DNA from: Ranitomeya imitator
Taxonomy: Eukaryota
Reading direction: 5' to 3'
Length of the DNA: 64,000 nucleotides
Assembly (NCBI RefSeq): GCF_032444005.1
Contig: NC_091284.1
Location: 535,308,001-535,372,000 of the forward strand
The notes under the pieces were generated by a model, which worked only from the letters and a program-made list of their open reading frames with translations, was not told where the DNA came from and searched no databases. A program made the position numbers and the translations under genes. Numbering within the stretch: the stretch's first letter is position 1; each line of letters begins with the position of its first letter. Below are positions 18,876-43,799 of the stretch, piece after piece.

Positions 18876-19629
18876 TGTTGTGAATTCAGCTTTTGGGCTC
18901 CCTCCGGTGGTTGTAGAGGGTAATGCAGTTGTGCCTGGACCACAGGACAGGTGTATCTACTAATTGCAAAACTGACTGGGGTATATAGCTTTGTTGGATC
19001 CTTTAGTCAGTGCCAGTTGTCCATTGTTCTTGAAGGATTCACTTCCCTGCTGGTCTCTCCAGTTTGCTGTGTTTTTCTACAAAGATAAGTCCTGGCTTTG
19101 TTTTTGCAGTCCATCTGCAGTGGACCTTATAGTTCTGTGCATTTTCATGTTTTTGTCTTGTCCAGCTTGGTTTGTGAAGGATTTTTTGCAGCCTAGCTAT
19201 TTCTCTGGAGATGCAGATATACCCCCCATGTCTTTAGTCAGATGTGGTGATCCGTATTTTCTGCGGTGGATATTTTCTAGTGTTTTTATACTGACCGCAT
19301 TGTACTCTGTTCTATTCTTTCTTTTTAGCTAGTATGGCCTCCTATGCTAAAATCTGATTTCATATCTACGTATGTTATTTCCCTCTCCTCTCACAGTCAA
19401 TATTTCTGGGGGGGCTATCTATACTTTGGGGATTTTCTCTGAGGCAAGATAGGTTTCCTGTTTCTGTCTTTAGGGGTAGTTAGATCTTAGGCTGTGGGGT
19501 CTAGGGAGCGTTAGGTACCCCCCACGGCTACTTTTAGTTGCACTGCTAGGTTCAGGGTTTGCGGTCAGTACAGGGACCACCTTCTCCAGAGTACGTCTCA
19601 TGCTGCTCCAAGGCCACCAGATCATAACA
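18876..19629 (+). repeat. Gypsy A 5' LTR
   Basis: TG...CA termini, TATATA at 18982, matches the split 3' LTR. Confidence 0.95.
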
Positions 19630-22388
19630 GTACAACTGGCCAACAATGAGTTAATTGCATCTCAGAAGAAGGGTGGAAAGATTTTGAGCCATTTTTTTTC
19701 CTTAGCCTGTTTGGTCTGTTCCTCCCTCTTTACCTCTGGGTGGCTACGGAGTCTAGTATTAACATGAATGTCCAGGAGTTAGTTTCTCGGGTGGATCAGC
19801 TTGCTGCTGGGGTACAGGGTATTTGAGATTTCATTGTTCAGACTCCTGCCTTAGAGCCTAAGATTCCCACTCCTGATTTATTCTTTGGTGACAGATCCAA
19901 ATTTTTGAGTTTCAAAAATAACTTTAAACTGTTTTTTGCATTAAGACCCCGGTCTCCTTGTGATCCTATTCAGCGGGTTAAAATCATCATATCTCTGCTG
20001 CGTGGTGACCCACAGGATTGGGCATTTTCCCTGGAATCTGGCAATCCTGCTTTGCTTAATGTTGATTCGTTCTTTCAGGCATTGGGGTTGTTGTATGATG
20101 AGCCTAATTCTGTGGATCAGGCTGAGAAAATCTTGTTAGCCCTGTGTCAAGGTCAGGAAGCGGCAGAATTGTATTGCCGGAAATTTAGAAAATGTCTGTA
20201 TTGACTAAATGGAATGAGGATGCCTTGGCGGCAATTTTCAGAAAGGGTCTTTCTGAATCCGTTAAAGATGTTATGGTGGGGTTCTCCACGCCTGCTGGTC
20301 TGAGTGATTCTATGTCTCTGGCCATTCAGATTGATCGGCGCTTGCGTGAGCGCAGAATTGTGCACACTGTGGTGTTGTCCTTTGAGCTGAGCCCTGAGCC
20401 TATGCAGTGTGATAGGATTTTGTCTAGAGCTGAACGTCAAACATTCAGGCGTCAGAATAGGTTGTGTTTTTACTGCGGCGATTCTGCTCATGTTATTTCT
20501 GATTGCACTAAGCGTACTAAGAGAATCGCTAGTTCTGTTGCCATCAGTACTATACAACCTAAATTTCTGTTATCTGTGACCTTGATCTGCTCATTATCAT
20601 CATTTTCTGTCATGGCATTTGTGGATTCAGGCGCCGCTCTGAACTTAATGGACTTAGAATTTGCCCGACGTTGTGGTTTTCCCTTGCAGCCTTTGCAGAA
20701 CCCTATTCCTTTGAGGGGCATTGATGCTACACCGTTGGCTAAAAATAAACCTCAGTTTAGGACACAGCTGACCATGCGCATGGCGCCAGCCCATCAGGAA
20801 GATTGTCGTTTTCTGGTGTTGCATAATTTGCATGATGATATTGTGCTGGGTTTTCCATGGTTGCAGCTACATAATCCGGTGTTAGATTGGAAATCCATGT
20901 CTGTGACTAGTTGGGATTGTCAGGGGGTTCATGATCAGGTTCCTTTGATGTCGATCTCCTCTCTCCCCTCTTCTGAAGTTCCTGAGTTTTTGTCTGACTT
21001 CCAGGATGTATTTGATGAGCCCAAATCCAGTTCCCTTCCACCGCATAGGGACTGTGATTGTGCTATTGATTTGATTCCAGGTTGTAAGTTCCCTAAGGGC
21101 CGACTTTTCAACCTGTCTGTGCCTGAACATACCGCCATGCGGAGCTATATTAAGGAGTCTTTGGAGAAAGGGCATATTCGGCCATCTTCTTCACCGTTGG
21201 GAGCGGGGTTCTTTTTTGTTGCCAAGAAGGATGGCTCCTTGAGACCCTGTATTGATTATCGCCTCTTGAATAAGATCACGGTTAAATTTCAATACCCCTT
21301 GCCTTTGCTTACTGATTTGTTTGCTCGGATTAAGGGGGCTAGCTGGTTTACTAAGATTGACCTTCGAGGGGCATATAATCTTATTCGTATCAAGCAGGGT
21401 GACGAATGGAAAACTGCATTTAATACGCCCGAAGGCCATTTTGCATACCTTGTGATGCCATTCGGACTCTCTAATGCCCCATCTGTGTTCCAATCCTTCA
21501 TGCATGATATCTTTCGGAGTTATCTTGATAAATTCATGGTTGTATATTTGGATGATATTTTGATTTTTTCCAATGATTGGGAGTCTCATGTGAAACAGGT
21601 CAGGATGGTATTTCAGATCCTCCGTAATAATGCTTTGTTTGTGAAGGGGTCAAAGTGCCTCTTTGGAGTGCAGAAGGTTTCTTTTTTGGGTTTCATTTTT
21701 TCTCCCTCATCTATAGAAATGGATCCGGTTAAGGTTCAGGCCATTCATGATTGGATTCAGCCCACATCTGTGAAGAGCCTTCAGAAATTCTTGGGCTTTG
21801 CTAATTTTTATCGTCGTTTCATTGCCAACTTCTCCAGTGTGGTTAAACCTCTAACCGATTTGACTAAGAAAGGCGCTGATGTGACGAATTGGTCCTCCGC
21901 GGCTGTTTCTGCCTTTCAGGAGCTTAAACGCCAATTTACTTCTGCCCCTGTGTTGCATCAGCCAGATGTTTCTCTTCCATTTCAGGTTGAGGTTGACGCG
22001 TCTGAGATTGGGGCAGGGGCCGTTTTGTCTCAGAGGAATTCTGATGGTTCCTTGATGAAACCATGTGCCTTCTTTTCTCGGAAGTTTTTGCCTGCTGAAC
22101 GCAATTATGATGTCGGCAATCGGGAGTTGTTTTACTATGAAGTGGGCATTTGAGGAGTGGCGACATTGGCTTGAGGGGGCCAAGCACCGTATTGTGGTCC
22201 TAACCGATCATAAGAATCTGATTTACCTCGATAAATCAAGTGTAGATGACGGACAGCACTCCCTTACTTGGGCGCTCGTTCCATATCCAGGGAACCCACC
22301 TGGGTAACACGTCACAGTCTGCACAAAGGAACAGCGCTCCACCGGGTGTATCGATAAAAATAAATCCTTTATTTAGCCATAGAACAAA

Positions 22389-22424
22389 AGCGACGTTTCG
22401 ACCATATGCTGGTCTTTTTCAAGC
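22389..22424 (-). ncRNA. Minimal hammerhead ribozyme motif, U3-A8 core variant
   Basis: GC-TTGAAAA-A-GACCA(gcata)TGGTC-GAA-ACGT-C^GC: 5-bp stem II, palindromic stem III, GUC cleavage triplet. Stem I is weak. Confidence 0.7.
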
Positions 22425-23568
22425 ATACAAACATGGCTGACAGGCGGTCTTAAATATCGTGGAGCCAATCGCTACCAAGTACCGCCCATCTCACAATATA
22501 AATCAACATTATGTAAACATATATAAAATAGACATCAGGCATTATAATATACATATAGATAAAGTAACATTCATTCCCTTCACAATACCAGTGAAAAACG
22601 ATCACTTAAAGCACTAAAACCCAATATTTGTTTATACTTTAGCTCTCCTCGATCTCACCGCCTGTATACGTTGCCATAGTGAACAACACTTCCTGTATGT
22701 GACTAGCACACGTACCGCACTTAGCATAGCCAATCTCATTTGGTCTAACATAAAGCATCTAACATTAGCCAATCGTATGATCTCTTATACTCACATATCA
22801 CTACCGGTATCCACCAACGCTATGATTACTAACCATGTCTGAAGGCAGTGGGGCGCAGGCACAGCCACGTCAGAGCAGGGCCGCGCCTCATCACATGATC
22901 CGACAGAGGCCGTGCCCGGAAGTGACGACAGCCATTGCCGCACCTCCACACATCCCCAGGCCAGGCAGATCACCACGGAGACGTGGATAAACATCACCAC
23001 GTTATCCCTCGGCCCCGCCTCCCCAGTCAGTCCCGGAGAAGGAGTCCAGGTACTAGCGCAGTGCGTGTGGACTGAAACTAACCACACGCAAAGCACAACT
23101 GCGCCTACACTACCCACATCCCGCACCGACTAGCAGGTCAGGAGCTCAAGAAAGATGTATTTATAATAAGGCTTATTCAGGAGACATTATATAGAGATCA
23201 CCGATACACAATATATTCCAATTAAATCCCATATGGGCAAATCAATACATAAGTGCAGATCGCGGAGCAGCAAAATATAACAAATCTATAACCATCTTTG
23301 TGAACATATAATAAAATACATAACAGTCACACTGTGGCAGTCGGGAACTTGAAGAAACTTATTCCTTGAAGATAGAAATATCCTTTATCCATATAAATCA
23401 TCCAATTTAAATATTTCCCAGCATCCTCAACTATATCCATCCACCGACCGTCACACGTGTGCTTGCTATAATAAAAACATAACAAACACCCAAGATATTA
23501 AAAACATGATGAGCAACGCATATGGAAAGAAAAAGGAAAAAACCATAATATCATTAAGGGGGGTCCAA

Positions 23569-24318
23569 TCAATAGGTACATCCATGAAGACTGAAATCAA
23601 TGTTCAATCCCCCTGGTTGTAACGAACCTAATGTATAGATCCATTTCATCTCTTTGGTTTTAAGCATTTGCAGCCTATCCCCACCCCTTCTCAAAACAGG
23701 AACATGGTCTATAACCCTAAATCTAAGCTGGTTCACTAAATGTTTCCTATCAATGAAATGTTTTGGGACTGGCAACTCGGTGATTCCCGTTCTTATAGTA
23801 CTTTTATGTTTGGTGATGCGAGCTTTCACCTCCATAGTTGTTTCGCCAATATAGGCGAGTCCACAGGGACAGGTGATCATATAGATAACATAACTGGACA
23901 GACATGTGTATCTCTCCTTTAGATAGAATTTCTTCCCAGTATGAGGATGACAAAAATGGTCCCCCTTCAGCATGTTATTGCAACAAGCACATCCGAGACA
24001 TGGGAAATTCCCATGTTTCGGTGTACTTAATGTTCTCTGAACCACTTTTTTAGAGGACCCAAAATCAGATCTCATCAGTCTATCCCCTAGGTTCTTACCC
24101 CTCCTGTATGACATCATGGGGGGCAATTTAAAACCTGACACCTGTGGCAAACCCCGTTGTAGGAGGGCCCAATGTTTTTTTATTACACCACCAATCCGAT
24201 TACTCACAGAGTTGTAGGTGGAAACAAAAGGAATGCGGTCACAACCGCTTTTGGAGGAGACTTTCTTGCGGACACTATCCCTTGTTGAGTTTCGGGCTTT
24301 AGTTTTAAACGCCTCCAC
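23569..24318 (-). CDS. C-terminal part of PLE1 ORF: Cys-rich linker and GIY-YIG endonuclease
   Basis: CLGCACCNN linker; VIYMITCPCGLAYIGETT...RITKH; ExxWI..L.SLQPGGLN. RT lost by 5' truncation. Confidence 0.9.
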   Translation of the reverse strand: MEAFKTKARNSTRDSVRKKVSSKSGCDRIPFVSTYNSVSNRIGGVIKKHWALLQRGLPQVSGFKLPPMMSYRRGKNLGDRLMRSDFGSSKKVVQRTLSTPKHGNFPCLGCACCNNMLKGDHFCHPHTGKKFYLKERYTCLSSYVIYMITCPCGLAYIGETTMEVKARITKHKSTIRTGITELPVPKHFIDRKHLVNQLRFRVIDHVPVLRRGGDRLQMLKTKEMKWIYTLGSLQPGGLNIDFSLHGCTY

Positions 24319-27239
24319 ATTTCTTCTGATTTACCTCAAGTCTGCCAAACGGCTGAATCCTAGACAGGCTTGATGGTCTCTGTTTTTCTCCCGTTTTGAT
24401 TTTGTGGTCTCGTACATTCCTGGTACTAAGATTGTTAAGGCGGATGCCCTCTCTAGGAGTTTTTTTCCCGATTCCCCTGGGGTTCTTGAGCCGGTTGGCA
24501 TTTTGAAGGAGGGGGTGATTCTTTCTGCCATCTAACCCTGATTTGCGATGGGTTCTTCAGGAATTTCAGGCTGATAAGCCTGACCGTTGTCCTGTGGGGA
24601 AACTGTTTGTTCCTGATAGATGGACTAGTAAAGTGATTTCTGAGGTTCATTGTTCTGTGTTGGCTGGTCATCCTGGGATTTTTGGTACCAGAGATTTAGT
24701 TGGTAGGTCCTTTTGGTGGACTTCTTTGTCACGGGATGTGCGTTCTTTTGTGCAGTCCTGTGGGATTTGTGCGCGGGCTAAGCCTTGCTGTTCCCGCGCT
24801 AGTGGGTTGCTTTTGCCATTGCCGGTCCCTGAGAGACCTTGGACGCATATTTCTATGGATTTTATTTCCGATCTTCCTGTTTCCCAAAGAATGTTGGTTA
24901 TCTGGGTTGTCTGTGACCGATTTTCTAAGATGGTTCATTTGGTGCCTTTGCCTAAATTGCCTTCTTCTTCTGATTTGGTTCCGTTGTTTTTTCAGCATGT
25001 GGTCCGTTTGCATGGTATTCCGGAGAATATTGTGTCCGACAGAGGTTCCCAGTTTGTTTCCAGGTTTTGGCGTGCCTTTTGTGCCAAGCTGGGCATTGAT
25101 TTGTCTTTTTCCTCTGCATTTCATCCTCAGACAAATGGCCAGACTGAGCGAACTAATCAGACCTTGGAGACCTATTTGAGATGCTTTGTGTCTGCTGATC
25201 AGGTTGATTGGGTGGCTTTTTTGCCATTGGCCGAGTTTGCCCTTAATAATCGGGCTAGTTCGGCTACTTTGGTTTCGCCTTTTTTTGTAATTTTGGTTTT
25301 CATCCTCGTTTTTCTTCTGGGCAGGTTGAGCCTTCTGATCTTCCAGGTGTGGATTCTGTGGTCGACAGGTTGCAGCAGATTTGGGCTTGTGTGGTGGACA
25401 ATTTGGTGCTGTCTCAGGAGGAGGCTTAGCGTTTTGCTAACCGTCATCGGTGTGTTGGTTCCCGGCTTCGGGTTGGTGATCTGGTTTGGTTATCTTCCCG
25501 TCATGTTCCTGTGAAGGTTTCTTCCCCTAAGTTTAAGCCTCGATTTATTGGTCCTTATAGGATTTCTGAGATTATTAATCCGGTGCCCTTTCGCCTGGCG
25601 CTTCCGGCCTCTTTTGCTATTCATAATGTCTTCCATAGATCTTTGTTGCGGAAATATGTGGAGCCGTTGTTCCCTCTGTTGATCCTCCGGCCCCTGTATT
25701 GGTCGATGGGGAGTTGGAATATGTTGTTGAGAAGATTTTGGATTCCCGTTTTTCGAGCCGGAAGCTTCAGTACCTTGTCAAGTGGAAGGGTTATGGCCAG
25801 GAGGATAATTCTTGGGTTTCTGCCTCTGATGTCCATGCCGTTGATTTGGTTCGTGCCTTTCATCAGGCTCATCCTGATCAGCCTGGGGGCTCTGGTGAGG
25901 GTTCGGTGACCCCTCCTCAAGGGGGGGTACTGTTGTGAATTCAGCTTTTGGGCTCCCTCCGGTGGTTGTAGAGGGTAATGCAGTTGTGCCTGGACCACAG
26001 GAGTGGACAGGTGTATCTACTAATTGCAAAACTGACTGGGGTATATAGCTTTGCTGGATCCTTTAGTCAGTGCCAGTTGTTCATTGTTCTTGAAGGATTC
26101 ACTTCCCTGCTGGTCTCTCCAGTTTGCTGTGTTTTTCTACAAAGATAAGTCCTGGCTTTGTTTTTGCTGTCCATCTGCAGTGGACCTTATAGTTCTGTGC
26201 ATTTTCATGTTTTTGTGTTGTCCAGCTTGGTTTGTGAAGGATTTTTTGCAGCCTAGCTATTTCTCTGGAGATGCAGATATACCCCCCATGTCTTTAGTCA
26301 GATGTGGTGATCCGTATTTTCTGCGGTGGATATTTTCTAGTGTTTTTATACTAACCGCTGTGACGATCTGACTGCACTCAGTGTAATCTGAGCGCAGTCC
26401 AATAGTGACCATGAGAACGGAAGACTGAGACAATCTGACTGCTCTCTGATGAAATCTGAGCGCAGTCCTATAGTGACCGTGAGGACAGAAGACTGTGACA
26501 ATCTGACTGCACTCAGATGAAATCTGAGCGCAGTCCAATAGTGACCGTGAGGACGGAAGAACCGGACAGAGAGTGGACCCTCTGGGTCACGGTACTGATA
26601 CACCCAGGGGCGAGCGAACCCGCGATGACAACCCCTATACAGGGATAGTTGGGGAGCAGGCCCGAGGGGAACAATACCGCAACAGCTGGCACCAAGAGGG
26701 ACGGCTCTGGAAAGGACAGAAGGGAAGGACAGAAGTAGAGGAGAAATCCTGGGAATGAAAGTAAAAGGGAAAGGGGAGGAAGGGACGAACCAAGGGAGAC
26801 AGGCTGGGAAAACGGAGGGAAGACAGGAGGAGAATGAGCCTGAGAAAACGGACCAGACCGGAGCAGAAAAGGATCTGAACCAGACAGGGCCAAACGAAGG
26901 TACAAACTGCACACAACAATCAGGCACCTCCATTATGGAGGCGAGGCCTGTTATAGCCCAAAGAAGTACCTGATTTGAGGAGACAGGAGCAGGGAGGGTC
27001 AGAAATGGTTAACTGGAGGAAGAAGTGCACGCCCACGTCCTAAGGCGCATGTGTGGAGCAGGTACAGGACGGGAGGGAAGAGGAGCGCGCACCCCACGCC
27101 GAAATCCCCGAGCAGAAGAGGACGCGGGGAACCGGCGCGACACTGAGAGCGGCAAGGAGAAATGGAGAGAGCGGGACTGATAGGAGAAGCGGCCGCAGCA
27201 TCAGAGGAGGCCGGTATGACAGTACCCCCCCTCCTAAGA

Positions 27240-32067: not shown

Positions 32068-33279
32068 TAACCTTACAAGGGAGGAGAGGGGACGTCTTCG
32101 TGTCCTTCAGAACCTTGGGGATGTAGTGTTTAAGCCAGCGGACAAGGGGGGAAACATAGTGGTTTGGCCTAATGCTATGTATGAAAGAGAGGCCTACCGC
32201 CAATTAAATAATCAAACATGCTACAAAAAACTTACGTTTAACCCCTTGTCCGCTTTTTCACAACAACTTATGTGTATTATTAAGAATGCGAGGGATGTGG
32301 GTACAATTACCAATGAATTGGCATCGGCATTGGTTGTGCCGGAACCCACTATTCCCACTTTCTACCTCCTCCCTAAGGTTCACAAGGACATGAGGACGCC
32401 CCCTGGTCGTCCAATAATTTCCGGTAAGGGTAATTACCTAGAGAAGGTAAATCAGTGGATCGACTCTAAATTGCAACCCTTGGTGGAAGGGCTACCGTCA
32501 TTCCTTAAGGATACGGGAGAGCTCTTAAGGAGAATTGATGGTATTCATCTTGAGGAGGATGAGTTATTAGTGACGGCAGATGTCGAATCACTTTATACTA
32601 GCATCCGACATCAAGACGGTCTTCGGGCCATTGAATTCTTTTTGGATACATCAAATCTCCCTGCGGATATTAGGAGTTTCATCTATAAATTGTTGGAATT
32701 CTCCTTGACACACAATTTTTTTGTTTTTAAGGGGTCCTTCTTCCTGCAGCTCCAGGGAACAGCTATGGGGGCTCCTTTTGCCCTTGCTTTTGCTAACCTG
32801 TTCCTGGGGCTGTGGGAGAGGGACCTCCCCCTGCCTGATGGTCCTGAGTCAATGTGCCGCGTCCATTTTTGGACGCGGTACATTGACGATGTTTTGATCA
32901 TCTGGCAGGGTTCTAGTGATGGTCTGCGGGATTTCATGGCATTACTTAACAATAATGCTCGTAATATACTGTTGACATATAAATTCGATAGGAATACTGT
33001 CGAATTTTTGGATGTTACTATTAAACGTGACTCCCGTGGGAGCCTGCAGACTGTCATCTATCGTAAACCCACTTCTACTAATCTTTTGTTGCATGCCTCC
33101 TCCTCCCATCCTAATCATGTTATTCAAGCCATCCCCACGGGACAATAACTTCGCTTACGTAGACTGTGTTCTACTGAAGCTGATTTCTACACTCAGGCTG
33201 ATGATTTAAAGAACAGGTTAATTGCTCGTGGACACAGCAAGCGTAGCATTAAAAAAGCCTTCAACAGAGCTAGGTTTAC
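32068..33279 (+). pseudogene. PLE2 reverse transcriptase (5'-truncated)
   Basis: KPADKGG, PTFYLLPKVHK, GRPIISG, TADVESLYT, QGTAMGA, RYIDD, FLDV, YRKPT motifs. One in-frame TAA at 33146-33148. Continues in frame at 38974 after removing C. Confidence 0.95.
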
Positions 33280-36200
33280 TGTTATGGCTGGCAATCAGGC
33301 AACACAGCGTGCAGTAATCAGCGCACATACAGAGATCTGGCAATAACCCAAAACAATAGGACGAGCTCTGAGACGTGGAATCTCTGTAGACTGCAGTACC
33401 TGATCTATCCTCACACAACTGGAAGCAGCAGTGGATTGCGCCTACCCACTACCTATGCAACTCGGCACTGCCTGAGGAGCTGACTAGCCTGAAGATAGAA
33501 ATACAAGCCTGACTTACCTCAGAGAAATACCCCAAAGGAATAGGCAGCCCCCACACATAATGACTGTTAGCAAGATGAAAAGACAAACGTAGGAATGAAA
33601 TAGATTCAGCAAAGTGAGGCCCGATATTCTAGACAGAGCGAGGATAGCAAAGAGAACTATGCAGTCTACAAAAAACCCTAAAACGAAAACCACGCAAAGG
33701 GGCAAAAAGACCCACCGTGCCGAACTAACAGCACGGCGGTGCACCCCTTTGCTTCTCAGAGCTTCCAGCAAAAGATAATAACAAGCTGGACAGAAAAAAC
33801 AGAAAACAAACTAGAGGCACTTATCTAGCAGAGCAGCAGGCCCAAGGAAAGATGCAGTAGCTCAAATCCAACACTGGAACATTGACAAGGAGCAAGGAAG
33901 ACAGACTCAGGTGGAGCTAAATAGCAAGGCAGCCAACGAGCTCACCAAAACACCTGAGGGAGGAAGCCCAGAGACTGCAATACCACTTGTGACCACAGAA
34001 GTGAACTCAGCCACAGAATTCACAACAGTACCCCCCCCTTGAGGAGGGGTCACCGAACCCTCACCAGAACCCCCAGGCCGACCAGGATGAGCCACATGAA
34101 AGGCACGAACAAGATCTGGGGCATGGACATCAGAGGCAAAAACCCAGGAATTATCTTCCTGAGCATAACCCTTCCATTTGACCAGATACTGGAGTTTCCG
34201 TCTAGAGACACGAGAATCCAAAATCTTCTCCACAATATACTCCAATTCCCCCTCCACCAAAACAGGGGCAGGAGGCTCCACAGATGGAACCATAGGTGCC
34301 ACGTATCTCCTCAACAACGACCTATGGAATACATTATGTATGGAAAAGGAGTCTGGGAGGGTCAGACGAAAAGACACCGGATTGAGAATCTCAGAAATCC
34401 TATACGGACCAATAAAACGAGGTTTAAATTTAGGAGAGGAAACCTTCATAGGTATATGACGAGAAGATAACCAAACCAGATCCCCAACACGAAGTCGGGG
34501 TCCCACACGGCGTCTGCGATTAGCGAAAAGCTGAGCCTTCTCCTGGGACAAGGTCAAATTGTCCACTACCTGAGTCCAGATCTGCTGCAACCTGTCCACC
34601 ACATTATCCACACCAGGACAGTCCGAAGACTCAACCTGTCCTGAAGAGAAACGAGGATGGAACCCAGAATTGCAGAAAAATGGAGAGACCAAGGTAGCCG
34701 AGCTGGCCCGATTATTAAGGGCGAACTCAGCCAACGGCAAAAATTACACCCAATCATCCTGGTCAGCGGAAACAAAACATCTCAGATATGTTTCCAAGGT
34801 CTGATTGGTTCGTTCGGTCTGGCCATTAGTCTGAGGATGGAAGGCCGAGGAAAAAGATAGGTCAATGCCCATCCTACCACAAAAGGCTCGCCAGAACCTC
34901 GAGACAAACTGGGAACCTCTGTCAGAAACAATATTCTCAGGAATGCCATGTAAACGAACCACATGCTGGAAGAACAAAGGCACCAAATCAGAGGAGGAAG
35001 GCAATTTAACCAAGGGCACCAGATGGACCATTTTAGAAAAGCGATCACAGACCACCCAAATGACAGACATCTTTTGAGAAACGGGAAGGTCAGAAATGAA
35101 ATCCATCGAAATATGTGTCCAAGGCCTCTTCGGGACCGGCAAGGGCAAAAGCAACCCACTGGCACGTGAACAGCAGGGCTTAGCCCTAGCACAAATTCCA
35201 CAGGACTGCACAAAAGCACGCACATCCCGTGACAGAGATGGCCACCAGAAGGATCTAGCAACCAACTCCCTGGTACCAAAGATTCCTGGATGACCGGCCA
35301 GCACCGAACAATGAAGTTCAGAGATAACTTTACTAGTCCACCTATCAGGGACGAACAGTTTCTCGGCCGGACAACGATCAGGTTTATTAGCCTGAAATTT
35401 CTGCAACACTCTCCGCAAATCAGGGGAGATGGCAGACACAATGACTCCTTCCTTGAGGATACTCGCCGGCTCAGATAACCCCGGAGAGTCGGGCACAAAA
35501 CTCCTAGACAGAGCATCCGCCTTCACATTTTTAGAGCCCGGAAGGTATGAAATCACAAAATCAAAACGAGCAAAAAACAACGACCAACGGGCCTGTCTAG
35601 GATTCAAGCGCTTGGCAGACTCAAGATAAGTAAGGTTCTTATGATCAGTCAAAACCACCACGCGATGCTTAGCACCCTCAAGCCAATGACGCCACTCCTC
35701 GAATGCCCACTTCATGGCCAGCAACTCTCGGTTGCCCACATCATAATTACGCTCAGCAGCAGAAAATTTCCTGGAAAAGAAAGCACATGGCTTGAACACT
35801 GAGCAACCAGAACCTCTCTGTGACAAAACCGCCCCTGCACCAATCTCAGAAGCATCAACCTCGACCTGGAACGGAAGAGAAACATCAGGTTGACACAACA
35901 CAGGGGCACAGCAAAAACGACGCTTCAACTCCTGAAAAGCTTCCACGGCAGCAGAAGACCAATTAACCAAATCAGCACCCTTCTTGGTCAAATCGGTCAA
36001 TGGTCTGGCAATGCTAGAAAAATTACAGATGAAGCGACGATAAAAATTAGCAAAGCCCAGGAATTTCTGCAAACTTTTTAGAGATGTCGGCTGAGTCCAA
36101 TCCTGAATGGCCTGAACCTTAACCGGATCCATCTCGATAGTAGAAGGGGAAAAGATGAACCCCAAAAATGAAACTTTCTGCACACCGAAGAGACACTTTG

Positions 36201-38967
36201 ATCCCTTCACGAACAAGGAATTAGCACGCAGTACCTGGAAAACCATTCTGACTTGCTTCACATGAGACTCCCAATCATCTGAGAAGATCAAAATGTCATC
36301 CAAGTAAACAATCAAGAATTTATCCAGATACTCACGGAAAATGTCATGCATAAAAGACTGAAAAACAGATGGAGCATTGGCAAGTCCGAACGGCATCACC
36401 AGATACTCAAAATGACCCTCGGGCGTATTAAATGCCGTTTTCCATTCATCTCCCTGCCTGATTCTCACCAGATTATACGCACCACGAAGAGCAATCTTAG
36501 TAAACCAACTAGCCCCCTTAATCCGAGCAAACAAGTCAGAAATCAATGGCAAGGGATACTGAAACTTAACAGTGATCTTATTAAGAAGGCGGTAATCAAT
36601 ACACGGTCTTAGCGAACCATCCTTCTTGGCTACAAAAAAGAACCCTGCTCCCAATGGTGACGACGATGGGCGAATATGTCCCTTCTCCAGGGACTCCTTC
36701 ACATAACTGCGCATAGCGGTGTGTTCAGGTACGGACAAATTAAATAAACGACCCTTAGGGAATTTACTACCAGGAATCAAATCGATAGCACAATCACAAT
36801 TCCTATGCGGAGGAAGGGCATCAGACTTGGACTCTTCAAATACATCCTGAAAGTCCGACAAGAACTCTGGGATGTCAGAAGGAATGGATGACGAAATAGA
36901 CAAAAATGGAACATCACCATGTACTCCCTGACAACCCCAGCTGGTTACCGACATAGAGTTCCAATCCAATACTGGATTATGGGTTTGTAGCCATGGCAAC
37001 CCCAACACGACCACATCATGCAAATTATGCAGTACCAAAAAGCGAATAACTTCCTGATGTGCAGGAGCCATGCACATGGTCAGCTGGGCCCAGTACTGAG
37101 GCTTATTCTTGGCCAGAGGTGTAGCATCAATTCCTCTCAACGGAATAGGACACCGCAAAGGCTCCAAGAAAAATCCACAACGTTTAGCATAATCCAAATC
37201 CATCAGATTCAGGGCAGCGCCTGAATCCACAAACGCCATGACAGAATATGATGACAAAGAGCACATTAAGGTAATGGACAAAAGGAATTTGGACTGTACA
37301 GTACCAATAACGGCAGAGCTATCGAACCGCCTAGTGCGTTTAGGACAATTAGAAATAGCATGAGTAGAATCACCACAATAGAAACACAGTCTGTTCAGAC
37401 GTCTGTGTTCGTGCCGTTCTACTTTAGTCATAGTCCTGTCGCACTGCATAGGCTCAGGTTTACTCTCAGACAATACCGCCAGATGGTGCACAGATTTACG
37501 CTCGCGCAAGCGACGACCGATCTGAATGGCCAAGGACATAGACTCATTCAAACCAGCAGGCATAGGAAATCCCACCATTACATCCTTAAGAGCTTCAGAG
37601 AGACCCTTTCTGAACAAAGCTGCTAGTGCAGATTCATTCCACAGAGTGAGTACTGACCATTTTCTAAATTTCTGACAATATACTTCTACATCATCCTGAC
37701 CCTGGCATAAAGCCAGCAGATTTTTCTCAGCTTGATCCACTGAATTAGGCTCATCGTAAAGCAATCCCAGCGCCTGGAAAAATGCATCAACATTACTCAA
37801 TGCAGAATCTCCTGGTGCAAGAGAAAACGCCCAGTCCTGTGGGTCGCCGCGCAAAAAAGAAATAATAATCAAAACCTGTTGAATAGGATTACCAGAAGAA
37901 TGAGGTTTCAAGGCCAAAAATAGCTTACAATTATTTCTGAAGCTCAGGAACTTAGTTCTGTCACCAAAAAACAAATCAGGAATCGGAATTCTTGGTTCTA
38001 GCATCGATTTCTGATCAATAGTATCTTGAATCTTTTGTACATTTACAACGAGATTATCCATTGAGGAGCACAGAGCCTGAATATCCATGTCCACAGCTGT
38101 GTCCTGAAGCACTCTAATGTCTAGGGGAAAAAAAAGACTGAAGACAGAGCTAAGAAAAAAAAATGATGTCAGGATTTCTTTTTTCCCTCTATTGGAAATC
38201 ATTGAGTGGCTCCTTGTACTGTTATGGCTGGCAATCAGGCAACACAGCGTGCAGTAATCAGCGCACATACAGAGATCTGGCAATAACCCAAAACAATAGG
38301 ACGAGCTCTGAGACGTGGAATCTCTGTAGACTGCAGTACCTGATCTATCCTCACACAACTGGAAGCAGCAGTGGATTGCGCCTACCCACTACCTATGCAA
38401 CTCGGCACTGCCTGAGGAGCTGACTAGCCTGAAGATAGAAATACAAGCCTGACTTACCTCAGAGAAATACCCCAAAGGAATAGGCAGCCCCCACACATAA
38501 TGACTGTTAGCAAGATGAAAAGACAAACGTAGGAATGAAATAGATTCAGCAAAGTGAGGCCCGATATTCTAGACAGAGCGAGGATAGCAAAGAGAACTAT
38601 GCAGTCTACAAAAAACCCTAAAACGAAAACCACGCAAAGGGGCAAAAAGACCCACCGTGCCGAACTAACAGCACGGCGGTGCACCCCTTTGCTTCTCAGA
38701 GCTTCCAGCAAAAGATAATAACAAGCTGGACAGAAAAAACAGAAAACAAACTAGAGGCACTTATCTAGCAGAGCAGCAGGCCCAAGGAAAGATGCAGTAG
38801 CTCAAATCCAACACTGGAACATTGACAAGGAGCAAGGAAGACAGACTCAGGTGGAGCTAAATAGCAAGGCAGCCAACGAGCTCACCAAAACACCTGAGGG
38901 AGGAAGCCCAGAGACTGCAATACCACTTGTGACCACAGAAGTGAACTCAGCCACAGAATTCACAACA
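33280..38967 (-). mobile_element. Gypsy C: young chromovirus LTR retrotransposon inside the PLE2 ORF
   Basis: 748-bp LTRs 33280-34027 and 38220-38967 with no difference I could find. PPT at 34028-34046. GTTTAC on both flanks (33274-33279, 38968-38973). Confidence 0.98.
34028..38088 (-). pseudogene. gag-pol: Gypsy C single-frame gag-pol (Gag, CCHC, protease, RT, RNase H, integrase, chromodomain)
   Basis: ATG at 38088 (MDIQALC...). ORFs 34744-38358 and 33907-34740 share a frame, separated by one TAA (34744-34746). RT motif reads KIALRGAYN (Asp>Ala). Confidence 0.95.
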
Positions 38968-38973
38968 GTTTAC

Positions 38974-39709
38974 ATCGAGAGACTCGTTGTTATATGATAC
39001 TACAAATACACAGGAACATGAGGTTGTCCATTTTGTCACCAAGTATCATTCCCAATTCCCACTGATGAAAAGGATCCTTGATAGATCCTGGCACGTTTTA
39101 AGGGCGGACCCTGTCATTGCACGATTTATCCCTGAGAGGGCCGGCATCGCGGTCCGACGGTCCAGGAATCTAAGGGACATGTTAGTCCATAGCCACTATA
39201 CTGGTGAGAGAGTAAATACCTTTTTGGACTCGGCTGTTTCCCGGGTGGGGTGTTCTCCCTGCGGCCGCTGTGTTGCATGCCCAAACATTGAGCGGATTGG
39301 TGTGTTCCCCAATTCAGATGGGTCGCGTGAATTTGTTATCAAGAAAAGAATTACATGTACCAGCAGGAACGTTATCTATATGGTGACGTGTCCATGTAAC
39401 AAAAGATACGTGGGGATGACCACACGCCAGCTGAAAACACGGATACGCGAGCATGTTTTGGGCGTTGGCGCGGCGGCCGCAGTGGAGGATATCTCTACAC
39501 TAAAAGCATTACCGCGACATTTTCGGAGATTCCACGGCTGCGATGCCGGTCTCCTCAGGGCTAGGGGTATTGATCTATTGGAGGTGGGGATCCGTGGAGG
39601 GGGTACTTTTCAGCGTTTGGCCCGCATGGAGTCCAGGTGGATCTGGACGTTGAACACAGTCCATCCAGCGGGCCTCAATGATAATATTAGCTATGCCCCC
39701 TTCCTGTAA
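38974..39709 (+). CDS. PLE2 linker and GIY-YIG endonuclease (3' part of the interrupted ORF)
   Basis: CGRCVACPN linker; VIYMVTCPCNKRYVGMTT...RIREH; ESRWIWTL...PAGLN. Confidence 0.92.
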
Positions 39710-40560
39710 AAGTTGGTCTGCTGGTGTCTGTGGCATCACCCTGTCGCCATTGTGTTGTTTTTATTATTTTTAACGTACTTCTTTCTTTTCTTTTCTATTA
39801 TCCTAGTTTTATGTGACCCCCTGCCTGTGTGGATACTGCTGTGGAGCTACTATACCATGATATTCTTCTATCAACATTACCAACAAGATGAATTCTTCTG
39901 ATAATCCCTTGCTCGCTTTTTGGACATTTATATATAAAAAATTCCTTTTGGATTATTATTAATGATGCCATCCACAGCTTATATGATGGTTCGACTGTGT
40001 TGCTATTGTGAGCTTAATTTGTTGTGTGTATGGATAGTGGCAGCCACTTGGCTGTTTTATCATGTGGTACTATGGCAGCCCTCTGCTTATTATAGAAGCA
40101 TGTCATCTGCGGTTGATTTAGCTTAAGATGTTATCTGGGGGACAGTGGTATCCACAGGGTGAGTGTTCATTATAGTCGTGACACTTTTACCATGGCAGTG
40201 CTTTGTTCTCTCTGTATATTAGTTTTTTCTGTATATTAATTATATTTGTTTTGTTATTTATTGTATCTCGAGCCATGGTATATCCGGTACTTGTTGCCTT
40301 GGCTTCAATATTATGACTATCACCTGCTTCATGGTTGCGGTGCGCGTCCTCTTGCTCCTCTGCGCCTGCGCCTCCCATGGGGCTGTGTTTGGACGCCTGT
40401 GATCACGTGGGGCCCCTGTGGTCTCTTCTGTCCTCATGCCGCTCTGGGATGGTGTCGGCGTCATTGTTGCTATGACGACGTGCCTCTGTTTCCGGGTCGC
40501 GGTCGGCTTACATTTCCGGGGTCACTCCTTTTTAAACTGCTTGTCACTTTACGTTGTATG

Positions 40561-40600
40561 CCCCCTGACGAAGGTTTGGTTTCCGAAACGCGCGTTGGGG
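40561..40600 (+). ncRNA. Minimal type I hammerhead ribozyme, canonical core
   Basis: CCCC-CTGACGA-A-GG(tttggttt)CC-GAA-ACGCGCGT-T^GGGG: 4-bp stem I, perfect 8-nt palindromic stem III, predicted cleavage after 40596. Confidence 0.8.
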
Positions 40601-41166
40601 CGGAGGCTCGTCCCCAGGATCGCAGTCTACTCTGTGGTAGGTAACTTTGTGCGGTGGTCTATGATATGCTATAGTCTGATTTGTGACTTGGTTTGCATCA
40701 CTATTATTATTATAATACTGCCACACTGTTTAAGGGTGTACCTAATATGAAGGTTTCTACTATGATGGCCGCAAGCTACTTATTCCGGACCGTGGCCTGC
40801 ACATAGGTTTCCTACCAATAATTATGACTAGTTTATTAGTATTTTGTGCACTATTAGTGTCTGTATAGTTTAGGGTTATTAATTTTAGTAGACTAGCGTC
40901 TCCTGGGTATGTGCCTCCTGCTATATTTTCCAATGCCTTCATAGGTGTTGCCATATCTGTATCACCTCTCTTTCACTTGTGTTCTAGTTTTTATTAAAAG
41001 GTTATTAATAAAGCATTTTTGATATGAAACCTGCTCGACCTTAGTATCATCTTTTCTTGGTGCTTTCATGTTAAATTGATGATGGGTCTATAAGTTGTCT
41101 TTTATTGATGGTACAGATTGCGGATGTATTTAGTGTACCATGTGTGTTGGCCATATAAGCTGTTAC

Positions 41167-41476
41167 CTATCTTCTCCTGGTGTAGAGCTCCAATTTGCAT
41201 GTCCAACTCGAGAGTGACCATCTTGATGGAAACAGGTAGGGGTCTGCCATCCACTGCAGAAATAAAATGCGGAGTCTCAAGAGTAACCACAGGTATCCGA
41301 AATTTGTTCACCTCCTCCTGCCGAATGAAATTACCAACGGCACCCGAGTCCACATACGCCTCCACAGACCTACGCTCAAGACCTACAGAAATCAAAGCTG
41401 AAATAGTTAGGGGTAGAGAGGAATTTGAGTCATCTAGGAAGGCCTCTCTTACCTGGCCTAGGTGGAGGAGTTTCCC
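41167..41476 (-). pseudogene. pol: Gypsy B protease (5' part of pol, -1 frame relative to gag)
   Basis: AYVDSGAVGNFI motif. Joins in frame to 30180 (LHQEKI|[19 protein letters not shown]) after removing PLE2 and one TSD. Confidence 0.9.
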
Positions 41477-42483
41477 GGCCTCTCTGGACAGGAACGCAAG
41501 AAATGATTTACCCCTCCGCAATAAAGACACAAGCCCTGCGCCAACCTCTCCCTGCGACGCTGCTCTGACAACCTAACTCGATCCACCTGCATAGGTTCAG
41601 GAGAGGAAGAAGCAGAGGACTTGACCGAGGAGGAACCAGGCACCCAAATAGTCCTAAAGGATCTCCTCTCCCTGACTAATTCCCGAGAACGCTCCTGGAA
41701 ACGTAAATCAATACGTGTGGCCAGGGATATAAGGTCCTCCAGGATAGTAGGGGTATCCCGACCTGCGAGCTCATCCTTAATCTTGGACGAGAGCCCTCTC
41801 CAAAAAGCCCCTACCAGTGCCTCGTTATTCCACCCAAGCTCAGAAGAAAGTGTCCGGAAAAGGATGGCGTATTGTCCAACAGTAAGGTTCCCCTGTTGAA
41901 GATTAAAGAGGGATTCAGTGGTAGATGCCACCCGACCTGGCTCATCAAAGACCTTACGAAATGTGTCCAGAAAAATCTGTATACTGGCAACTACCGGGTC
42001 ATCCCGCTCCCATAAGGGGTTAACCCAGGACAGAGCTTCTCCCTCGAGATGGGACACAATAAAGGCCACCTTAGCACGATCAGAGGGATATTGCTGGGGT
42101 AGGAGCTCGAAGTGTAGACGGCACTGGTTCAAAAAACCCCGACACAATTTGGGATCGCCGCTGTATCGAGGGGGCTTTCCCAAACGAGGAGGAGGAAGGG
42201 GTACAGGATCTCGATGAGAGGCAGAAGCAGCGGTGGCAGACTGAAGAGAGTGAAGGCGGTCGTCAACCGATGCCATGTAAGTAAGAATATGGGACTGGGT
42301 ATCTCGCTGCTCTGCGAGCTCCTGCTGGAGTCCCACCAGCAGAGGGGCGTTACCAGGATCCGAAGTCTGTAGGGCGGTTAAACGAGAGTCCATAGACTTC
42401 ATAACAGACATAATACGGGTCTGATTCTCCCGTAAGAACAACAACTCCTTCTGGGTTGCTGCGGAGGCACCAGCGGGGTCCAT
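41458..42483 (-). CDS. gag: Gypsy B Gag (retrotransposon gag domain and CCHC knuckle), open
   Basis: ATG at 42483 (MDPAGASAA...); PPRYSGDPKLCRGFLNQC; CLYCGGVNHFLRSC; TAG at 41458-41460. Confidence 0.92.
   Translation of the reverse strand: MDPAGASAATQKELLFLRENQTRIMSVMKSMDSRLTALQTSDPGNAPLLVGLQQELAEQRDTQSHILTYMASVDDRLHSLQSATAASASHRDPVPLPPPRLGKPPRYSGDPKLCRGFLNQCRLHFELLPQQYPSDRAKVAFIVSHLEGEALSWVNPLWERDDPVVASIQIFLDTFRKVFDEPGRVASTTESLFNLQQGNLTVGQYAILFRTLSSELGWNNEALVGAFWRGLSSKIKDELAGRDTPTILEDLISLATRIDLRFQERSRELVRERRSFRTIWVPGSSSVKSSASSSPEPMQVDRVRLSEQRRRERLAQGLCLYCGGVNHFLRSCPERPGNSST
41470..41476 (-). promoter_or_regulatory. Putative -1 ribosomal frameshift slippery site G GGA AAC
   Basis: Correct X XXY YYZ register in the gag frame, three codons before the gag stop; pol is open in the -1 frame. 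Confidence 0.85.
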
Positions 42484-43799
42484 GGCCTGATTGTACTGTG
42501 ACGATCTGACTGCATTCTGATGTAATCTGAGCGCAGTCCTATAGTGACCGTGAGGACAGAAGACTGTGACAATCTGACTGCACTCAGATGAAATCTGAGC
42601 GCAGTCCAATAGTGACCGTGAGGACGGAATAACCGGACAGAGAGTGGACCCTCTGGGTCACGGTACTGATACACCCAGGGGCGAGCGAACCCGCGATGAC
42701 AACCCCTATACAGGGATAGTTGGGGAGCAGGCCCGAGGGGAACAATACCGCAACAGCTGGCACCAAGAGGGACGGCTCTGGAAAGGACAGAAGGGAAGGA
42801 CGGAAGTAGAGGAGAAATCCTGGGAATGAAAGTAAAAGGGAGAGGGGAGGAAGGGACGAACCAAGGGAGACAGGCTGGGAAAACGGAGGGAAGACAGGAG
42901 GAGAATGAGCCTGAGAAAACGGACCAGACCGGAGCAGAAAAGGATCTGAACCAGACAGGGCCAAAACGAAGGTACAAACTGCACACAACAATCAGGCACC
43001 TCCATTATGGAGGAGAGGCCTGATATAGCCCAAAGAAGTACCTGATTGGAGGAGACAGGAGCAGGGAGGGTCAGAAATGGTTAACAGGAGGAAGAAGTGC
43101 ACGCCCGCGTCCTAAGGCGCATGTGTGGAGCAGGTACAGGACGGGAGGGAAGAGGAGCGCGCACCCCACGCCGAAATCCCCGAGCAGCAGGAAGAGGATG
43201 CGGGGAACCGGCGCAACACTGAGAGCGGCGAGGAGAAATGGAGAGAGCGGGACTGATAGGAGAAGCGGCCGCAGCATCAGAGGAGGCCGTTATGACAACC
43301 GCATAGTACTCTGTTCAATTCTTTCTTTTTAGCTAGTATGGCCTCCTATGCTAAAATCTGATTTCATATCTACGTATGTTATTTCCCTCTCCTCTCACAG
43401 TCAATATTTGTGGGGGGCTATCTGTCCTTTGGGGATTTTTTCTGAGGCAAGATAGCTTTCCTGTTTCTGTCTTTAGGGGTAGTTAGATCTTAGGCTGTGT
43501 CGAGGGGTCTAGGGAGCGTTAGGTACCCCCCACGGCTACTTTTAGTTGCGCTGCTAGGTTCAGGGTTTGCGGTCAGTACAGGGACCACCTTCTCCAGAGT
43601 ACGTCTCATGCTGCTCCAAGGCCACCAGATCATAACAGACAGCAACCTAATGTAAATGCAGCCCAAATGTTCTTTTTTGGAAGTTGTCTAAATGTCCATG
43701 CCTTACCTTCTAAACCCATTTTGTTCAGGAAATCATGTCCTACGCCTCCTGCTTCTGTAACAAGTACTTAGTTGTCATATATGCATATCCCATGTGGGT

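What the first reader, a model, noticed from the sequence alone, without database searches (positions are those of the whole stretch)
18982..43027. Self-priming signature with compensatory changes in three Gypsy families: the sequence at TATA+30 pairs with the element's own PBS
Seen: A, B and C lack a TGG-type tRNA PBS. Exactly 30 nt after the first T of each LTR TATA box lies a 9-10-mer complementary to the sequence 2 nt (GT) past that element's 5' LTR. A: TATA 18982, GCCAGTTGT 19012-19020, PBS ACAACTGGC 19632-19640. B (minus): TATA 43027, GCCTGATTGT 42997-42988, PBS 42494-42485. C (minus): TATTTA 38863, GCTCCTTGT 38833-38825, PBS 38217-38209. The middle bases differ between families but pairing is always kept; all read GC...TGT. 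Established: Tf1 of fission yeast primes reverse transcription with its own first 11 nt, and self-priming has been proposed for vertebrate Tf1/sushi elements. Inference: these are self-priming elements with transcription starting at the GC. The mechanism class is known; the co-variation evidence and fixed spacing here may not be documented.
Basis: partly seen in the sequence, partly recalled or inferred. Interest (0 to 1): 0.8.

Follow-up and report, generated by a model that had tools for sequence, protein, structure and literature searches.

The report
Self-priming Gypsy retrotransposons in a frog
Three nested frog Gypsy retrotransposons each carry, at the predicted start of their own transcript, a 9-10 base stretch that pairs with their primer-binding site; this is the self-priming known from yeast Tf1 and fish sushi elements, so the reading is correct but not a new mechanism.

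Summary
Three nested Ty3/Gypsy elements are present. A is on the plus strand, B is inserted in A's 3' LTR, and C lies inside a Penelope-like insertion in B. Each has a 9-10 nt LTR segment exactly 30 nt after the first T of the LTR's only TATA-like box. That segment is perfectly complementary to the sequence starting 2 nt past the 5' LTR.

I found the same signature in 10 further vertebrate-type elements: 8 fish loci and 2 metagenome contigs. Together they give 8 different primer/PBS pairs, always perfectly paired. Close relatives differ by compensatory changes at 3 positions (A vs C), 2 positions (L010 vs L001) and 1 position (L016 vs L004). At least four probably fungal relatives also show it. 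In an RT tree, all 18 typed self-complementary rows included fall on one side of a 100/99 branch. Five relatives with a tRNA-iMet PBS fall on the other side.

This matches published knowledge: self-priming is a common feature of the Tf1/sushi chromovirus group, vertebrates included (PMC10085805, citing Butler 2001). So this is a new member of a known kind.

The transcription start is not mapped, because only assembled contigs were available. Four other first-reader notes in this genome report the same signature on other DNA. One small new point: an unpaired C always follows the PBS in the vertebrate branch.

The parts
18876..19629 (+). Element A, 5' LTR (TGTTGTG...CATAACA)
   Evidence: Direct repeat with 25931-26358 (97.7%) and 43298-43637 (95.7%). 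The target-site duplication GACAGC flanks the element.
18982..18987 (+). A: TATATA box, the only TATA-like motif in the LTR
19012..19020 (+). A: predicted self-primer GCCAGTTGT, the first 9 nt of the predicted transcript
   Evidence: It starts 30 nt after the first T of TATA. It is a perfect complement of 19632-19640. It is preceded by T.
19632..19640 (+). A: primer-binding site ACAACTGGC, 2 nt (GT) past the LTR, followed by an unpaired C
   Evidence: The duplex is in the minimum-energy fold of the 643-nt leader, mean pair probability 0.99.
19630..25930 (+). A: internal region (gag fragment, PR-RT-RNase H, IN), broken by a ~2.1 kb insert at 22232-24338 that carries a GIY-YIG ORF on the minus strand
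   Evidence: Pfam. Similarity to C is interrupted at 22231/24339.
25931..26358 (+). A: 3' LTR, first part, with its own copy of the primer at 26072-26080
43298..43637 (+). A: 3' LTR, second part, separated from the first part by the insertion of B
   Evidence: The target-site duplication ACCGC lies at 26354-26358 and 43298-43302.
42497..43297 (-). Element B, 5' LTR (TGTCATA...GTCACA)
   Evidence: 97.3% identical to 26424-27221. The U5 end carries a 68-nt tandem repeat, 2 copies here and 3 in the 3' LTR.
43022..43027 (-). B: TATATC box
42988..42997 (-). B: predicted self-primer GCCTGATTGT
   Evidence: It starts 30 nt after the first T of TATA. It is a perfect 10-nt complement of 42485-42494. 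It is preceded by T.
42485..42494 (-). B: primer-binding site ACAATCAGGC, 2 nt (GT) past the LTR, followed by C and then the gag ATG
   Evidence: The duplex is in the minimum-energy fold, pair probability 0.99.
26359..27221 (-). B: 3' LTR, with its own copy of the primer at 26916-26925
38220..38967 (-). Element C, 5' LTR (TGTTGTG...CCATAACA)
   Evidence: The two LTR copies (aligned 33277-34029 / 38217-38969) are 100% identical. It is homologous to the A LTR over R-U5.
38858..38863 (-). C: TATTTA box
38825..38833 (-). C: predicted self-primer GCTCCTTGT
   Evidence: It starts 30 nt after the first T of TATA. It is a perfect complement of 38209-38217. It differs from A at positions 3-5, and the PBS carries matching changes.
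38209..38217 (-). C: primer-binding site ACAAGGAGC, 2 nt (GT) past the LTR, followed by an unpaired C
   Evidence: The duplex is in the minimum-energy fold, pair probability 0.98.
34028..38219 (-). C: internal region. It is one gag-PR-RT-RNase H-IN reading frame with a single in-frame stop at 34744-34746. The SH3_Tf2-1 and chromodomain parts follow the stop.
33280..34027 (-). C: 3' LTR, with its own copy of the primer at 33885-33893

Best explanation
A, B and C are chromovirus-type Ty3/Gypsy LTR retrotransposons of the vertebrate branch of the Tf1/sushi group. They prime minus-strand DNA synthesis with the 5' end of their own RNA instead of a tRNA.

Proposed steps, all inferred unless marked otherwise:
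1. RNA polymerase II starts about 30 nt after the LTR TATA box, at the G of a T|G step.
2. The first 9-10 nt of the RNA fold back over the 500-620 nt R-U5 leader and pair with the PBS, which lies 2 nt past the LTR. The complementarity itself is shown.
3. The element's RNase H cuts after the last paired U. This step is inferred from Tf1.
4. The freed 3'-OH is extended through the GT spacer and U5.
5. The plus strand later copies the primer that is still attached. A change in the primer is therefore carried into the PBS of the progeny. This, together with selection, keeps the two sites complementary while they drift between families.
For: - Perfect 9-10 nt complements sit at the stated places in A, B and C.
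- They are rare in shuffled LTRs, and the first 16 nt of 3'-LTR flanks give at most 7 nt.
- The same signature occurs in 8 fish loci and 2 vertebrate-type metagenome contigs. Probable fungal relatives have 10-12 nt duplexes.
- There are 8 distinct primer/PBS pairs in the vertebrate branch, all perfectly paired. Compensatory changes separate close relatives: A vs C at 3 positions, L010 vs L001 at 2, L016 vs L004 at 1.
- The complement always starts 29-32 nt after the only nearby TATA-like box (26 nt in L016), at a pyrimidine|G step. Pairing never extends upstream, as expected if that is the RNA 5' end.
- The 5'-end:PBS duplex is in the minimum-energy fold of 6 of 8 predicted leaders, with pair probability above 0.95.
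- The domain order is PR-RT-RNase H-IN, with SH3_Tf2-1 and a chromodomain, and gag of the RTL1-8/Ty3-capsid type.
- In the RT tree, all 18 typed self-complementary rows lie on one side of a 100/99 branch, and the 5 rows with TGGTATCAGAGC (tRNA-iMet PBS) lie on the other.
- Literature: self-priming is a common feature of Tf1/sushi elements (PMC10085805), is implicated from fungi to vertebrates (PMC4600332), and is described in the group from yeast and vertebrates (PMC6317226).
- A contig from another organism's run reads ...G TACAACTGGCCAACAATGAGTTA after an A-type LTR end, so the A-type PBS recurs in other copies.
Against: - The transcription start, the RNase H cut and the cDNA 5' end are not observed. 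Only assembled contigs were available, and these cannot show RNA ends.
- The two flanking duplexes of Tf1's three-duplex 'pretzel' were not supported by my shuffle test, except beside B's PBS. Suggestive extensions exist in A, B and L008.
- The frog LTRs have no AATAAA-like signal downstream of the predicted start, so the R region is not delimited.
- No named reference such as Tf1 or sushi-ichi could be placed in the tree.
- The host tRNA set could not be screened.
Confidence: 0.85

Rival explanations
1. The 5'-end:PBS pairing is real, but it serves another purpose such as genome cyclisation for packaging, dimerisation or translational control. Priming would then use some other primer.
For: Long-range 5' leader pairings with non-priming roles exist in retroelements (general knowledge). 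Fish elements L004 and L009 also carry a 12-nt complement between the gag leader and the U3 start, so other long-range pairings do occur. No cleavage or cDNA data are available here.
Against: The paired site lies exactly where a PBS must lie, 1-2 nt after the LTR's terminal CA, in every element. No alternative tRNA-type PBS exists there. Relatives of the same clade are stated in the literature to use this duplex for priming, with Tf1 shown experimentally (PMC10085805, PMC4600332).
Confidence: 0.07
2. The PBSs bind host tRNAs, tRNA halves or other small RNAs, and the LTR matches are by-products.
For: Half-tRNA priming is known in some Copia lineages (PMC6317226). The frog tRNA set could not be screened, and no tRNA gene lies in the window.
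Against: None of the 13 vertebrate-type PBSs starts with TGG. The vertebrate branch alone has 8 different PBS sequences, and each is matched perfectly by its own LTR at the same promoter-relative place. A host RNA cannot co-vary with each family's LTR. Relatives that truly use tRNA-iMet are recognised at once and form a separate clade.
Confidence: 0.03
3. Chance complementarity in T/G-rich LTRs.
For: Per-element shuffle frequencies are not negligible for A (1.3%) and C (3.2%) when position is ignored. Stray 9-12-mers occur elsewhere within 300 nt.
Against: The same offset from the LTR end and the same offset from TATA occur in 13 of 13 vertebrate-type elements across lineages with only 50-58% RT identity. 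The joint probability is vanishingly small.
Confidence: 0.01

Closest known systems
Tf1 / Tf2 of Schizosaccharomyces pombe (founding self-priming LTR retrotransposons)
   Same: Chromodomain Ty3/Gypsy elements. There is no tRNA PBS. The first nucleotides of the mRNA pair with a PBS just past the 5' LTR (PMC10085805, PMC4600332). The Tf1 PBS starts ATAAC (PMC11042837), so like the frog PBSs it starts with A.
   Different: The Tf1 duplex is 11 bp (my recollection of Levin 1995, not read here), against 9-10 bp in the frog elements. Tf1 needs two flanking duplexes (the 'pretzel'), which I could not confirm here. The frog leaders are much longer (500-620 nt). The frog gag has a CCHC knuckle, which fission-yeast elements lack (PMC10085805).
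sushi-ichi of Takifugu and the vertebrate Tf1/sushi elements of Butler et al. 2001
   Same: Vertebrate chromoviruses for which self-priming and the pretzel fold were proposed (cited in PMC10085805 and PMC6317226). The gag is of the type that gave rise to the mammalian RTL/SIRH genes (Pfam RTL1-8_LDOC hits).
   Different: I could not read that paper or place sushi-ichi in my tree. The link therefore rests on domain content, on source names ('Tf2 polyprotein', 'Gypsy retrotransposon integrase-like') and on clustering with fish elements. The frog families here have a different LTR end/PBS design (GT spacer, primer ending in TGT) from the fish ones (G or GA spacer).
Tj1 of S. japonicus; plant Tcn1 (Gypsy) and TAR (Copia) lineages predicted to self-prime
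   Same: In these too, self-priming was inferred from complementarity between an upstream LTR segment and the PBS (PMC4600332, PMC6317226).
   Different: They are in different hosts and clades. TAR is a Copia lineage, so its self-priming is presumably independent.
Plant chromoviruses with a tRNA-iMet PBS (TGGTATCAGAGC)
   Same: Same domain architecture, with 40-43% RT identity to C.
   Different: They carry a tRNA-type PBS, and the one checked (L068) has no self-complement. They form the sister clade in my tree, as the literature describes (PMC10085805).

Membership tests
Tf1/sushi group of Ty3/Gypsy chromoviruses | Ty3/Gypsy polyprotein order: gag, PR, RT, RNase H, IN | tested here: met
   Pfam hits in that order in C (one frame), and in A and B (fragmented).
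Tf1/sushi group of Ty3/Gypsy chromoviruses | Chromodomain at the C-terminus of integrase | tested here: met
   C has SH3_Tf2-1 plus Chromo (E 5.5e-14). Near-identical Ranitomeya proteins and the fish homologues carry PF00385. B has SH3_Tf2-1 but no detectable chromodomain. A's end is degraded.
Tf1/sushi group of Ty3/Gypsy chromoviruses | No tRNA-type PBS; the PBS is complementary to the LTR sequence at the mRNA 5' end | tested here: met
   That the complement is the mRNA 5' end is inferred from the TATA spacing and the pairing boundary. It is not measured.
Tf1/sushi group of Ty3/Gypsy chromoviruses | RT/IN phylogeny: monophyletic with other self-priming elements, sister to tRNA-primed plant chromoviruses | tested here: met
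   In an RT-RNase H tree of 83 rows, a 100/99 branch separates the 5 tRNA-iMet rows from all 18 typed self-complementary rows. Frogs A, B and C fall in a 100/99 vertebrate clade. Caveat: no named reference sequence (Tf1, sushi-ichi) was available.
Tf1/sushi group of Ty3/Gypsy chromoviruses | Three-duplex 'pretzel' RNA structure around the PBS | tested here: inconclusive
   The central duplex is present. The flanking duplexes are not better than shuffles in 7 of 8 elements; the exception is B's post-PBS flank at 0/300. Short extensions occur in A (AUUGUU:AACAGU), B (UGUG:CACA) and L008 (8 bp).
Tf1/sushi group of Ty3/Gypsy chromoviruses | RNase H cleavage of the RNA:RNA duplex, and own RNA at the 5' end of minus-strand cDNA | not testable with these tools
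   This needs cDNA or VLP biochemistry, or raw RNA 5'-end data. Only contigs were served.
Tf1/sushi group of Ty3/Gypsy chromoviruses | Gag-Pol by -1 frameshift (stated as predominant in members outside the fission yeasts; not a defining feature) | tested here: not met
   C and the fish homologues encode gag-pol in a single frame. PMC10085805 describes this only as a tendency, and Tf1 itself is single-ORF.

The most novel reading that the evidence does not exclude
In the vertebrate branch the self-primer duplex is short (9-11 bp). In 13 of 13 elements it starts with G after a pyrimidine, and the PBS is followed by an unpaired C. That C would face the m7G cap of the primer.

One possibility is that the invariant C absorbs a cap-templated C, which reverse transcriptase would add when the plus strand copies the capped primer to its end. 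Another is that the C stacks or pairs with the cap. Either way, the cap would be part of the priming design.

The probably fungal relatives have longer duplexes (10-12 bp), start with A or C, and do not keep the C (3 of 6 PBS types counted across). The feature would therefore be specific to the vertebrate lineage.
Probability: 0.12. Interest if true: 0.5.

Novelty: new member of a known kind. Interest (0 to 1): 0.3.

Why it matters
It shows that the young, abundant Gypsy families of a poison-frog genome replicate without a host tRNA primer. These families best match Ranitomeya imitator proteins at 93-100% identity. One copy here has identical LTRs.

It also gives a simple sequence rule: a TATA box, then about 30 nt on a 9-10-mer that equals the reverse complement of the bases starting 1-2 nt past the LTR. 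The rule annotates the U3/R border and the PBS of this whole vertebrate clade, where tRNA-based LTR-finders would report 'no PBS'.

The mechanism itself has been known since 1995-2001, so the gain is annotation and a clean covariation data set, not a new principle.

Tried and rejected
- RNA evidence for the start site: the sequencing-run search returned only Logan contigs guessed to be RNA. Laying four runs showed heavy coverage of the C and A LTRs and contig breaks at LTR ends and near the U3/R border (for example X10 pieces 38219-38839 and 38841-38969). Contigs cannot show RNA ends, and subfamily divergence in U3 explains the breaks as well. This is not used as support.
Frog covariation beyond A, B and C could therefore not be tested.
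- Three fish loci (L006-L008) had no LTR pair. L008 could still be read from its 5' LTR alone.
- Other ACAGTACA sites in the window (11469, 49920, 49992, 57326, 60138, 60195): the two I read, 57326 and 11469, are not LTR/PBS junctions. The other four were not read.
- The fourth Gypsy fragment (51304-53739) has no LTR in the window.
- Pretzel flanking duplexes: not supported by a duplex-energy shuffle test.
- Poly(A) signal in the frog LTRs: none of 12 hexamer variants lies downstream of the primer.
- Primary papers (Levin 1995; Lin & Levin 1997 and 1998; Butler 2001; Atwood-Moore 2006) are not held. Their content is cited only through later papers.
- tRNA screen: no tRNA gene lies in the window, and no host tRNA set was available.
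Full report
**What is there**

A self-comparison of the window resolves a nest of LTR retrotransposons.

- Element A is on the plus strand. Its 5' LTR is 18876-19629. Its 3' LTR is split into 25931-26358 and 43298-43637. The target-site duplication is GACAGC.
- Element B is on the minus strand and spans 26359-43297. Its LTRs are 26359-27221 and 42497-43297. It inserted into A's 3' LTR, with target-site duplication ACCGC.
- B is itself interrupted by a block that contains a 1872-bp inverted duplication (30196-32067 against 41064-39193, 99.9% identical). ORFs with weak GIY-YIG endonuclease hits on both arms mark it as Penelope-like.
- Element C is on the minus strand and lies inside that block, at 33280-38967. 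Its LTR copies are 100% identical, so it is the youngest layer.
- LTR identities (A about 96-98%, B 97.3%, C 100%) agree with the nesting order.

Pfam shows gag, protease, RT, RNase H and integrase in that order in all three. C's integrase tail has SH3_Tf2-1 and a chromodomain. The best protein matches are Ranitomeya imitator predictions at 93-100% identity. Fish 'Tf2 polyprotein / Gypsy integrase-like' proteins follow at 40-47%. The window therefore presumably comes from that poison frog or a close relative.

**Checking the observation**

- In each element the LTR ends in ...ACA. A GT spacer follows, and then a 9-10 nt stretch. The exact reverse complement of that stretch lies in the same LTR.
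- The complement starts exactly 30 nt after the first T of the only TATA-like motif of that LTR (TATATA, TATATC, TATTTA).
- Pairing stops at the same point in all three. The LTR base before the complement is T, while the base after the PBS is C.
- I shuffled each LTR 3000 times, preserving dinucleotides. An equally long complement to the post-LTR sequence appeared anywhere in the LTR in 38 (A), 2 (B) and 95 (C) shuffles. The position requirement (4 of about 750 positions) tightens this by about two further orders of magnitude per element.
- The first 16 nt flanking the 3' LTRs give at most 7 nt.
- A and C are related: 78-83% identical in their internal regions, with LTRs alignable over R-U5. 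Their primers differ at three adjacent positions (GC-CAG-TTGT against GC-TCC-TTGT), and the PBS carries the matching changes.

**Does it generalise?**

- Seven fish loci with intact LTR pairs, and one read from its 5' LTR alone, all show the signature. A 9-10 nt LTR segment is perfectly complementary to the sequence 1-2 nt past the LTR. It starts 29-32 nt after a TATA-like box and begins with G after a pyrimidine.
- Two vertebrate-type metagenome contigs (L011, L016) show it as well.
- The vertebrate-type set has eight different primer/PBS pairs: GCCAGTTGT, GCTCCTTGT, GCCTGATTGT, GCGAAGTCTT, GCAAAGTATT, GTCTGGTCT, GTCTGGTAT/GGCTGAGCT and GCTCAGTCATG.
- Close relatives differ by compensatory changes: L010 against L001 at two positions, and L016 against L004 at one.
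- Among 80 metagenome relatives, several probably fungal elements have 10-12 nt duplexes with a TATA box 33-42 nt upstream (L033, L037, L062, L071).
- Five others carry the classical tRNA-iMet PBS TGGTATCAGAGC. The one checked with the LTR-complement scan, L068, has no self-complement.
- In a maximum-likelihood RT-RNase H tree of 83 rows, a branch with 100/99 support puts all five tRNA-iMet rows on one side and all 18 typed self-complementary rows on the other. Frogs A, B and C sit in a 100/99 clade with the fish elements.

**How it most likely works**

The literature held here says the following.

- Self-priming, discovered in Tf1, is a common feature of the Tf1/sushi group.
- That group is sister to tRNA-primed plant chromoviruses.
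- The central duplex forms between the mRNA's 5' end and the PBS, inside a three-duplex 'pretzel' (PMC10085805, citing Levin 1995/1996, Lin & Levin 1997/1998 and Butler 2001).
- The mechanism has been implicated from fungi to vertebrates (PMC4600332, PMC6317226).
- About half of Tf1 cDNA keeps a full PBS copy at its 3' end (PMC11042837).

The frog elements fit this picture.

- The TATA-to-complement distance of 30-31 nt is the canonical metazoan TATA-to-start spacing (established knowledge).
- The T|G step is a pyrimidine-purine initiator.
- Pairing ends where the RNA would end.
- When the predicted leaders are folded, the 5'-end:PBS duplex is in the minimum-energy structure of 6 of 8, with pair probability above 0.95, including all three frog leaders of 526-643 nt.

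The remaining steps are inferred from Tf1, not shown here. RNase H cuts after the last paired U. The 3'-OH is extended through the spacer and U5. The plus strand copies the attached primer. That last step would carry primer changes into the PBS and so help explain the covariation.

**What does not fit or is not shown**

- The start site is not mapped. The runs on offer are assembled contigs. Their breaks near the U3/R border of C can equally reflect subfamily divergence.
- One useful by-product: a contig from another organism continues past an A-type LTR end with G-TACAACTGGCCAACAATGAGTTA, so the A-type PBS recurs in other copies.
- The flanking duplexes of the pretzel were no better than shuffles, except beside B's PBS. 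Short helix extensions exist in A, B and L008.
- The frog LTRs contain no AATAAA-like hexamer downstream of the predicted start. The fish LTRs have AATAAA 25-60 nt before the LTR end. The frog R/U5 border is therefore unknown.
- Host tRNAs could not be screened. However, eight different PBSs, each matched by its own LTR at the same promoter-relative position, cannot be explained by host RNAs.

**Comparison and novelty**

This is Tf1/sushi-type self-priming in new frog families, so it is a new member of a known kind.

What may be new is modest.

- There is a clean covariation series.
- There is a practical rule for annotating the U3/R border and the PBS in this clade.
- In all 13 vertebrate-type elements the primer starts with G and the PBS is followed by an unpaired C. 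The probable fungal relatives do not share this.
- That C would face the primer's cap. A role in absorbing a cap-templated C at plus-strand transfer is possible, but it is speculative (about 0.12).

Four other first-reader notes in this genome (s1-288162, s1-280616, s1-307402, s1-307466) report the same LTR/PBS covariation on other DNA. I could not inspect those stretches.

**Verdict**

Confidence in self-priming is about 0.85. Interest is 0.3.

Noticed in passing
window 30196-32067 and 39193-41064: A 1872-bp inverted duplication (99.9% identical) lies inside B. An ORF with a weak GIY-YIG endonuclease hit sits on each arm (31551-32036 minus, 38987-39709 plus), and there is a weak RT ORF at 31976-33148. 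It looks like a Penelope-like element rearrangement, and C inserted into it.
   Followed up: partly
window 22232-24338: A carries about 2.1 kb that C lacks, between RNase H and integrase. It includes a minus-strand ORF (23569-24318) with a weak GIY-YIG hit. It is probably another Penelope-like fragment inserted in A.
   Followed up: partly
window 19012-19629, 42497-42997, 38220-38833: The frog LTRs have no AATAAA, ATTAAA or other common poly(A) hexamer downstream of the predicted start. A and C share AGATAAGT followed by a T/G-rich run about 70-90 nt after the start. Where these transcripts end is unexplained.
   Followed up: partly
window 19641, 42484, 38208; loci L001-L005, L008-L011, L016: The base right after the PBS is C in 13 of 13 vertebrate-type elements. 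It never pairs, because the LTR has T (once C) before the primer. The primer always starts with G and ends with T. Probable fungal relatives do not keep the C.
   Followed up: partly
window 26358-26560 and 42495-42629: B's LTR ends in a 68-nt tandem repeat, with 3.0 copies in the 3' LTR and 2.0 in the 5' LTR. Each unit ends in GTCACAGT, which is the LTR terminus plus the GT spacer. This may be a trace of aberrant strand transfer or priming.
   Followed up: no
window 34744-34746: C's otherwise continuous gag-pol frame has one in-frame stop inside integrase. The SH3 and chromodomain parts continue in the same frame after it. C's LTRs are identical, so the copy is very young but not intact.
   Followed up: no
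window 51304-53739 (minus): A fourth Gypsy fragment is present (RNase H, integrase, SH3_Tf2-1, chromodomain). It is about 51% identical to C over RNase H and integrase. No LTR or PBS is recognisable in the window.
   Followed up: partly
L004:10044-10055 with 9580-9591; L009:10044-10055 with 9600-9611: In two related fish elements, a 12-nt stretch (TGGTGAATGCCT) 75-81 nt past the 5' LTR is perfectly complementary to LTR positions 5-16, at the start of U3. This could be a 5'-3' long-range pairing in the genomic RNA.
   Followed up: no
L001, L002, L008, L010 around 10001: In fish group-1 elements the called gag-pol ORF starts at a conserved ATGGATC inside U5, right after AATAAA...GCAA. As called, the PBS therefore lies inside the reading frame. 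In frog B the gag ATG follows the PBS directly.
   Followed up: no
window 18870-18875/43638-43643; 38968-38973/33274-33279; 26354-26358/43298-43302: A and C appear to have 6-bp target-site duplications (GACAGC, GTAAAC). B and fish L002 have 5-bp ones. The sixth base could be a chance match.
   Followed up: no
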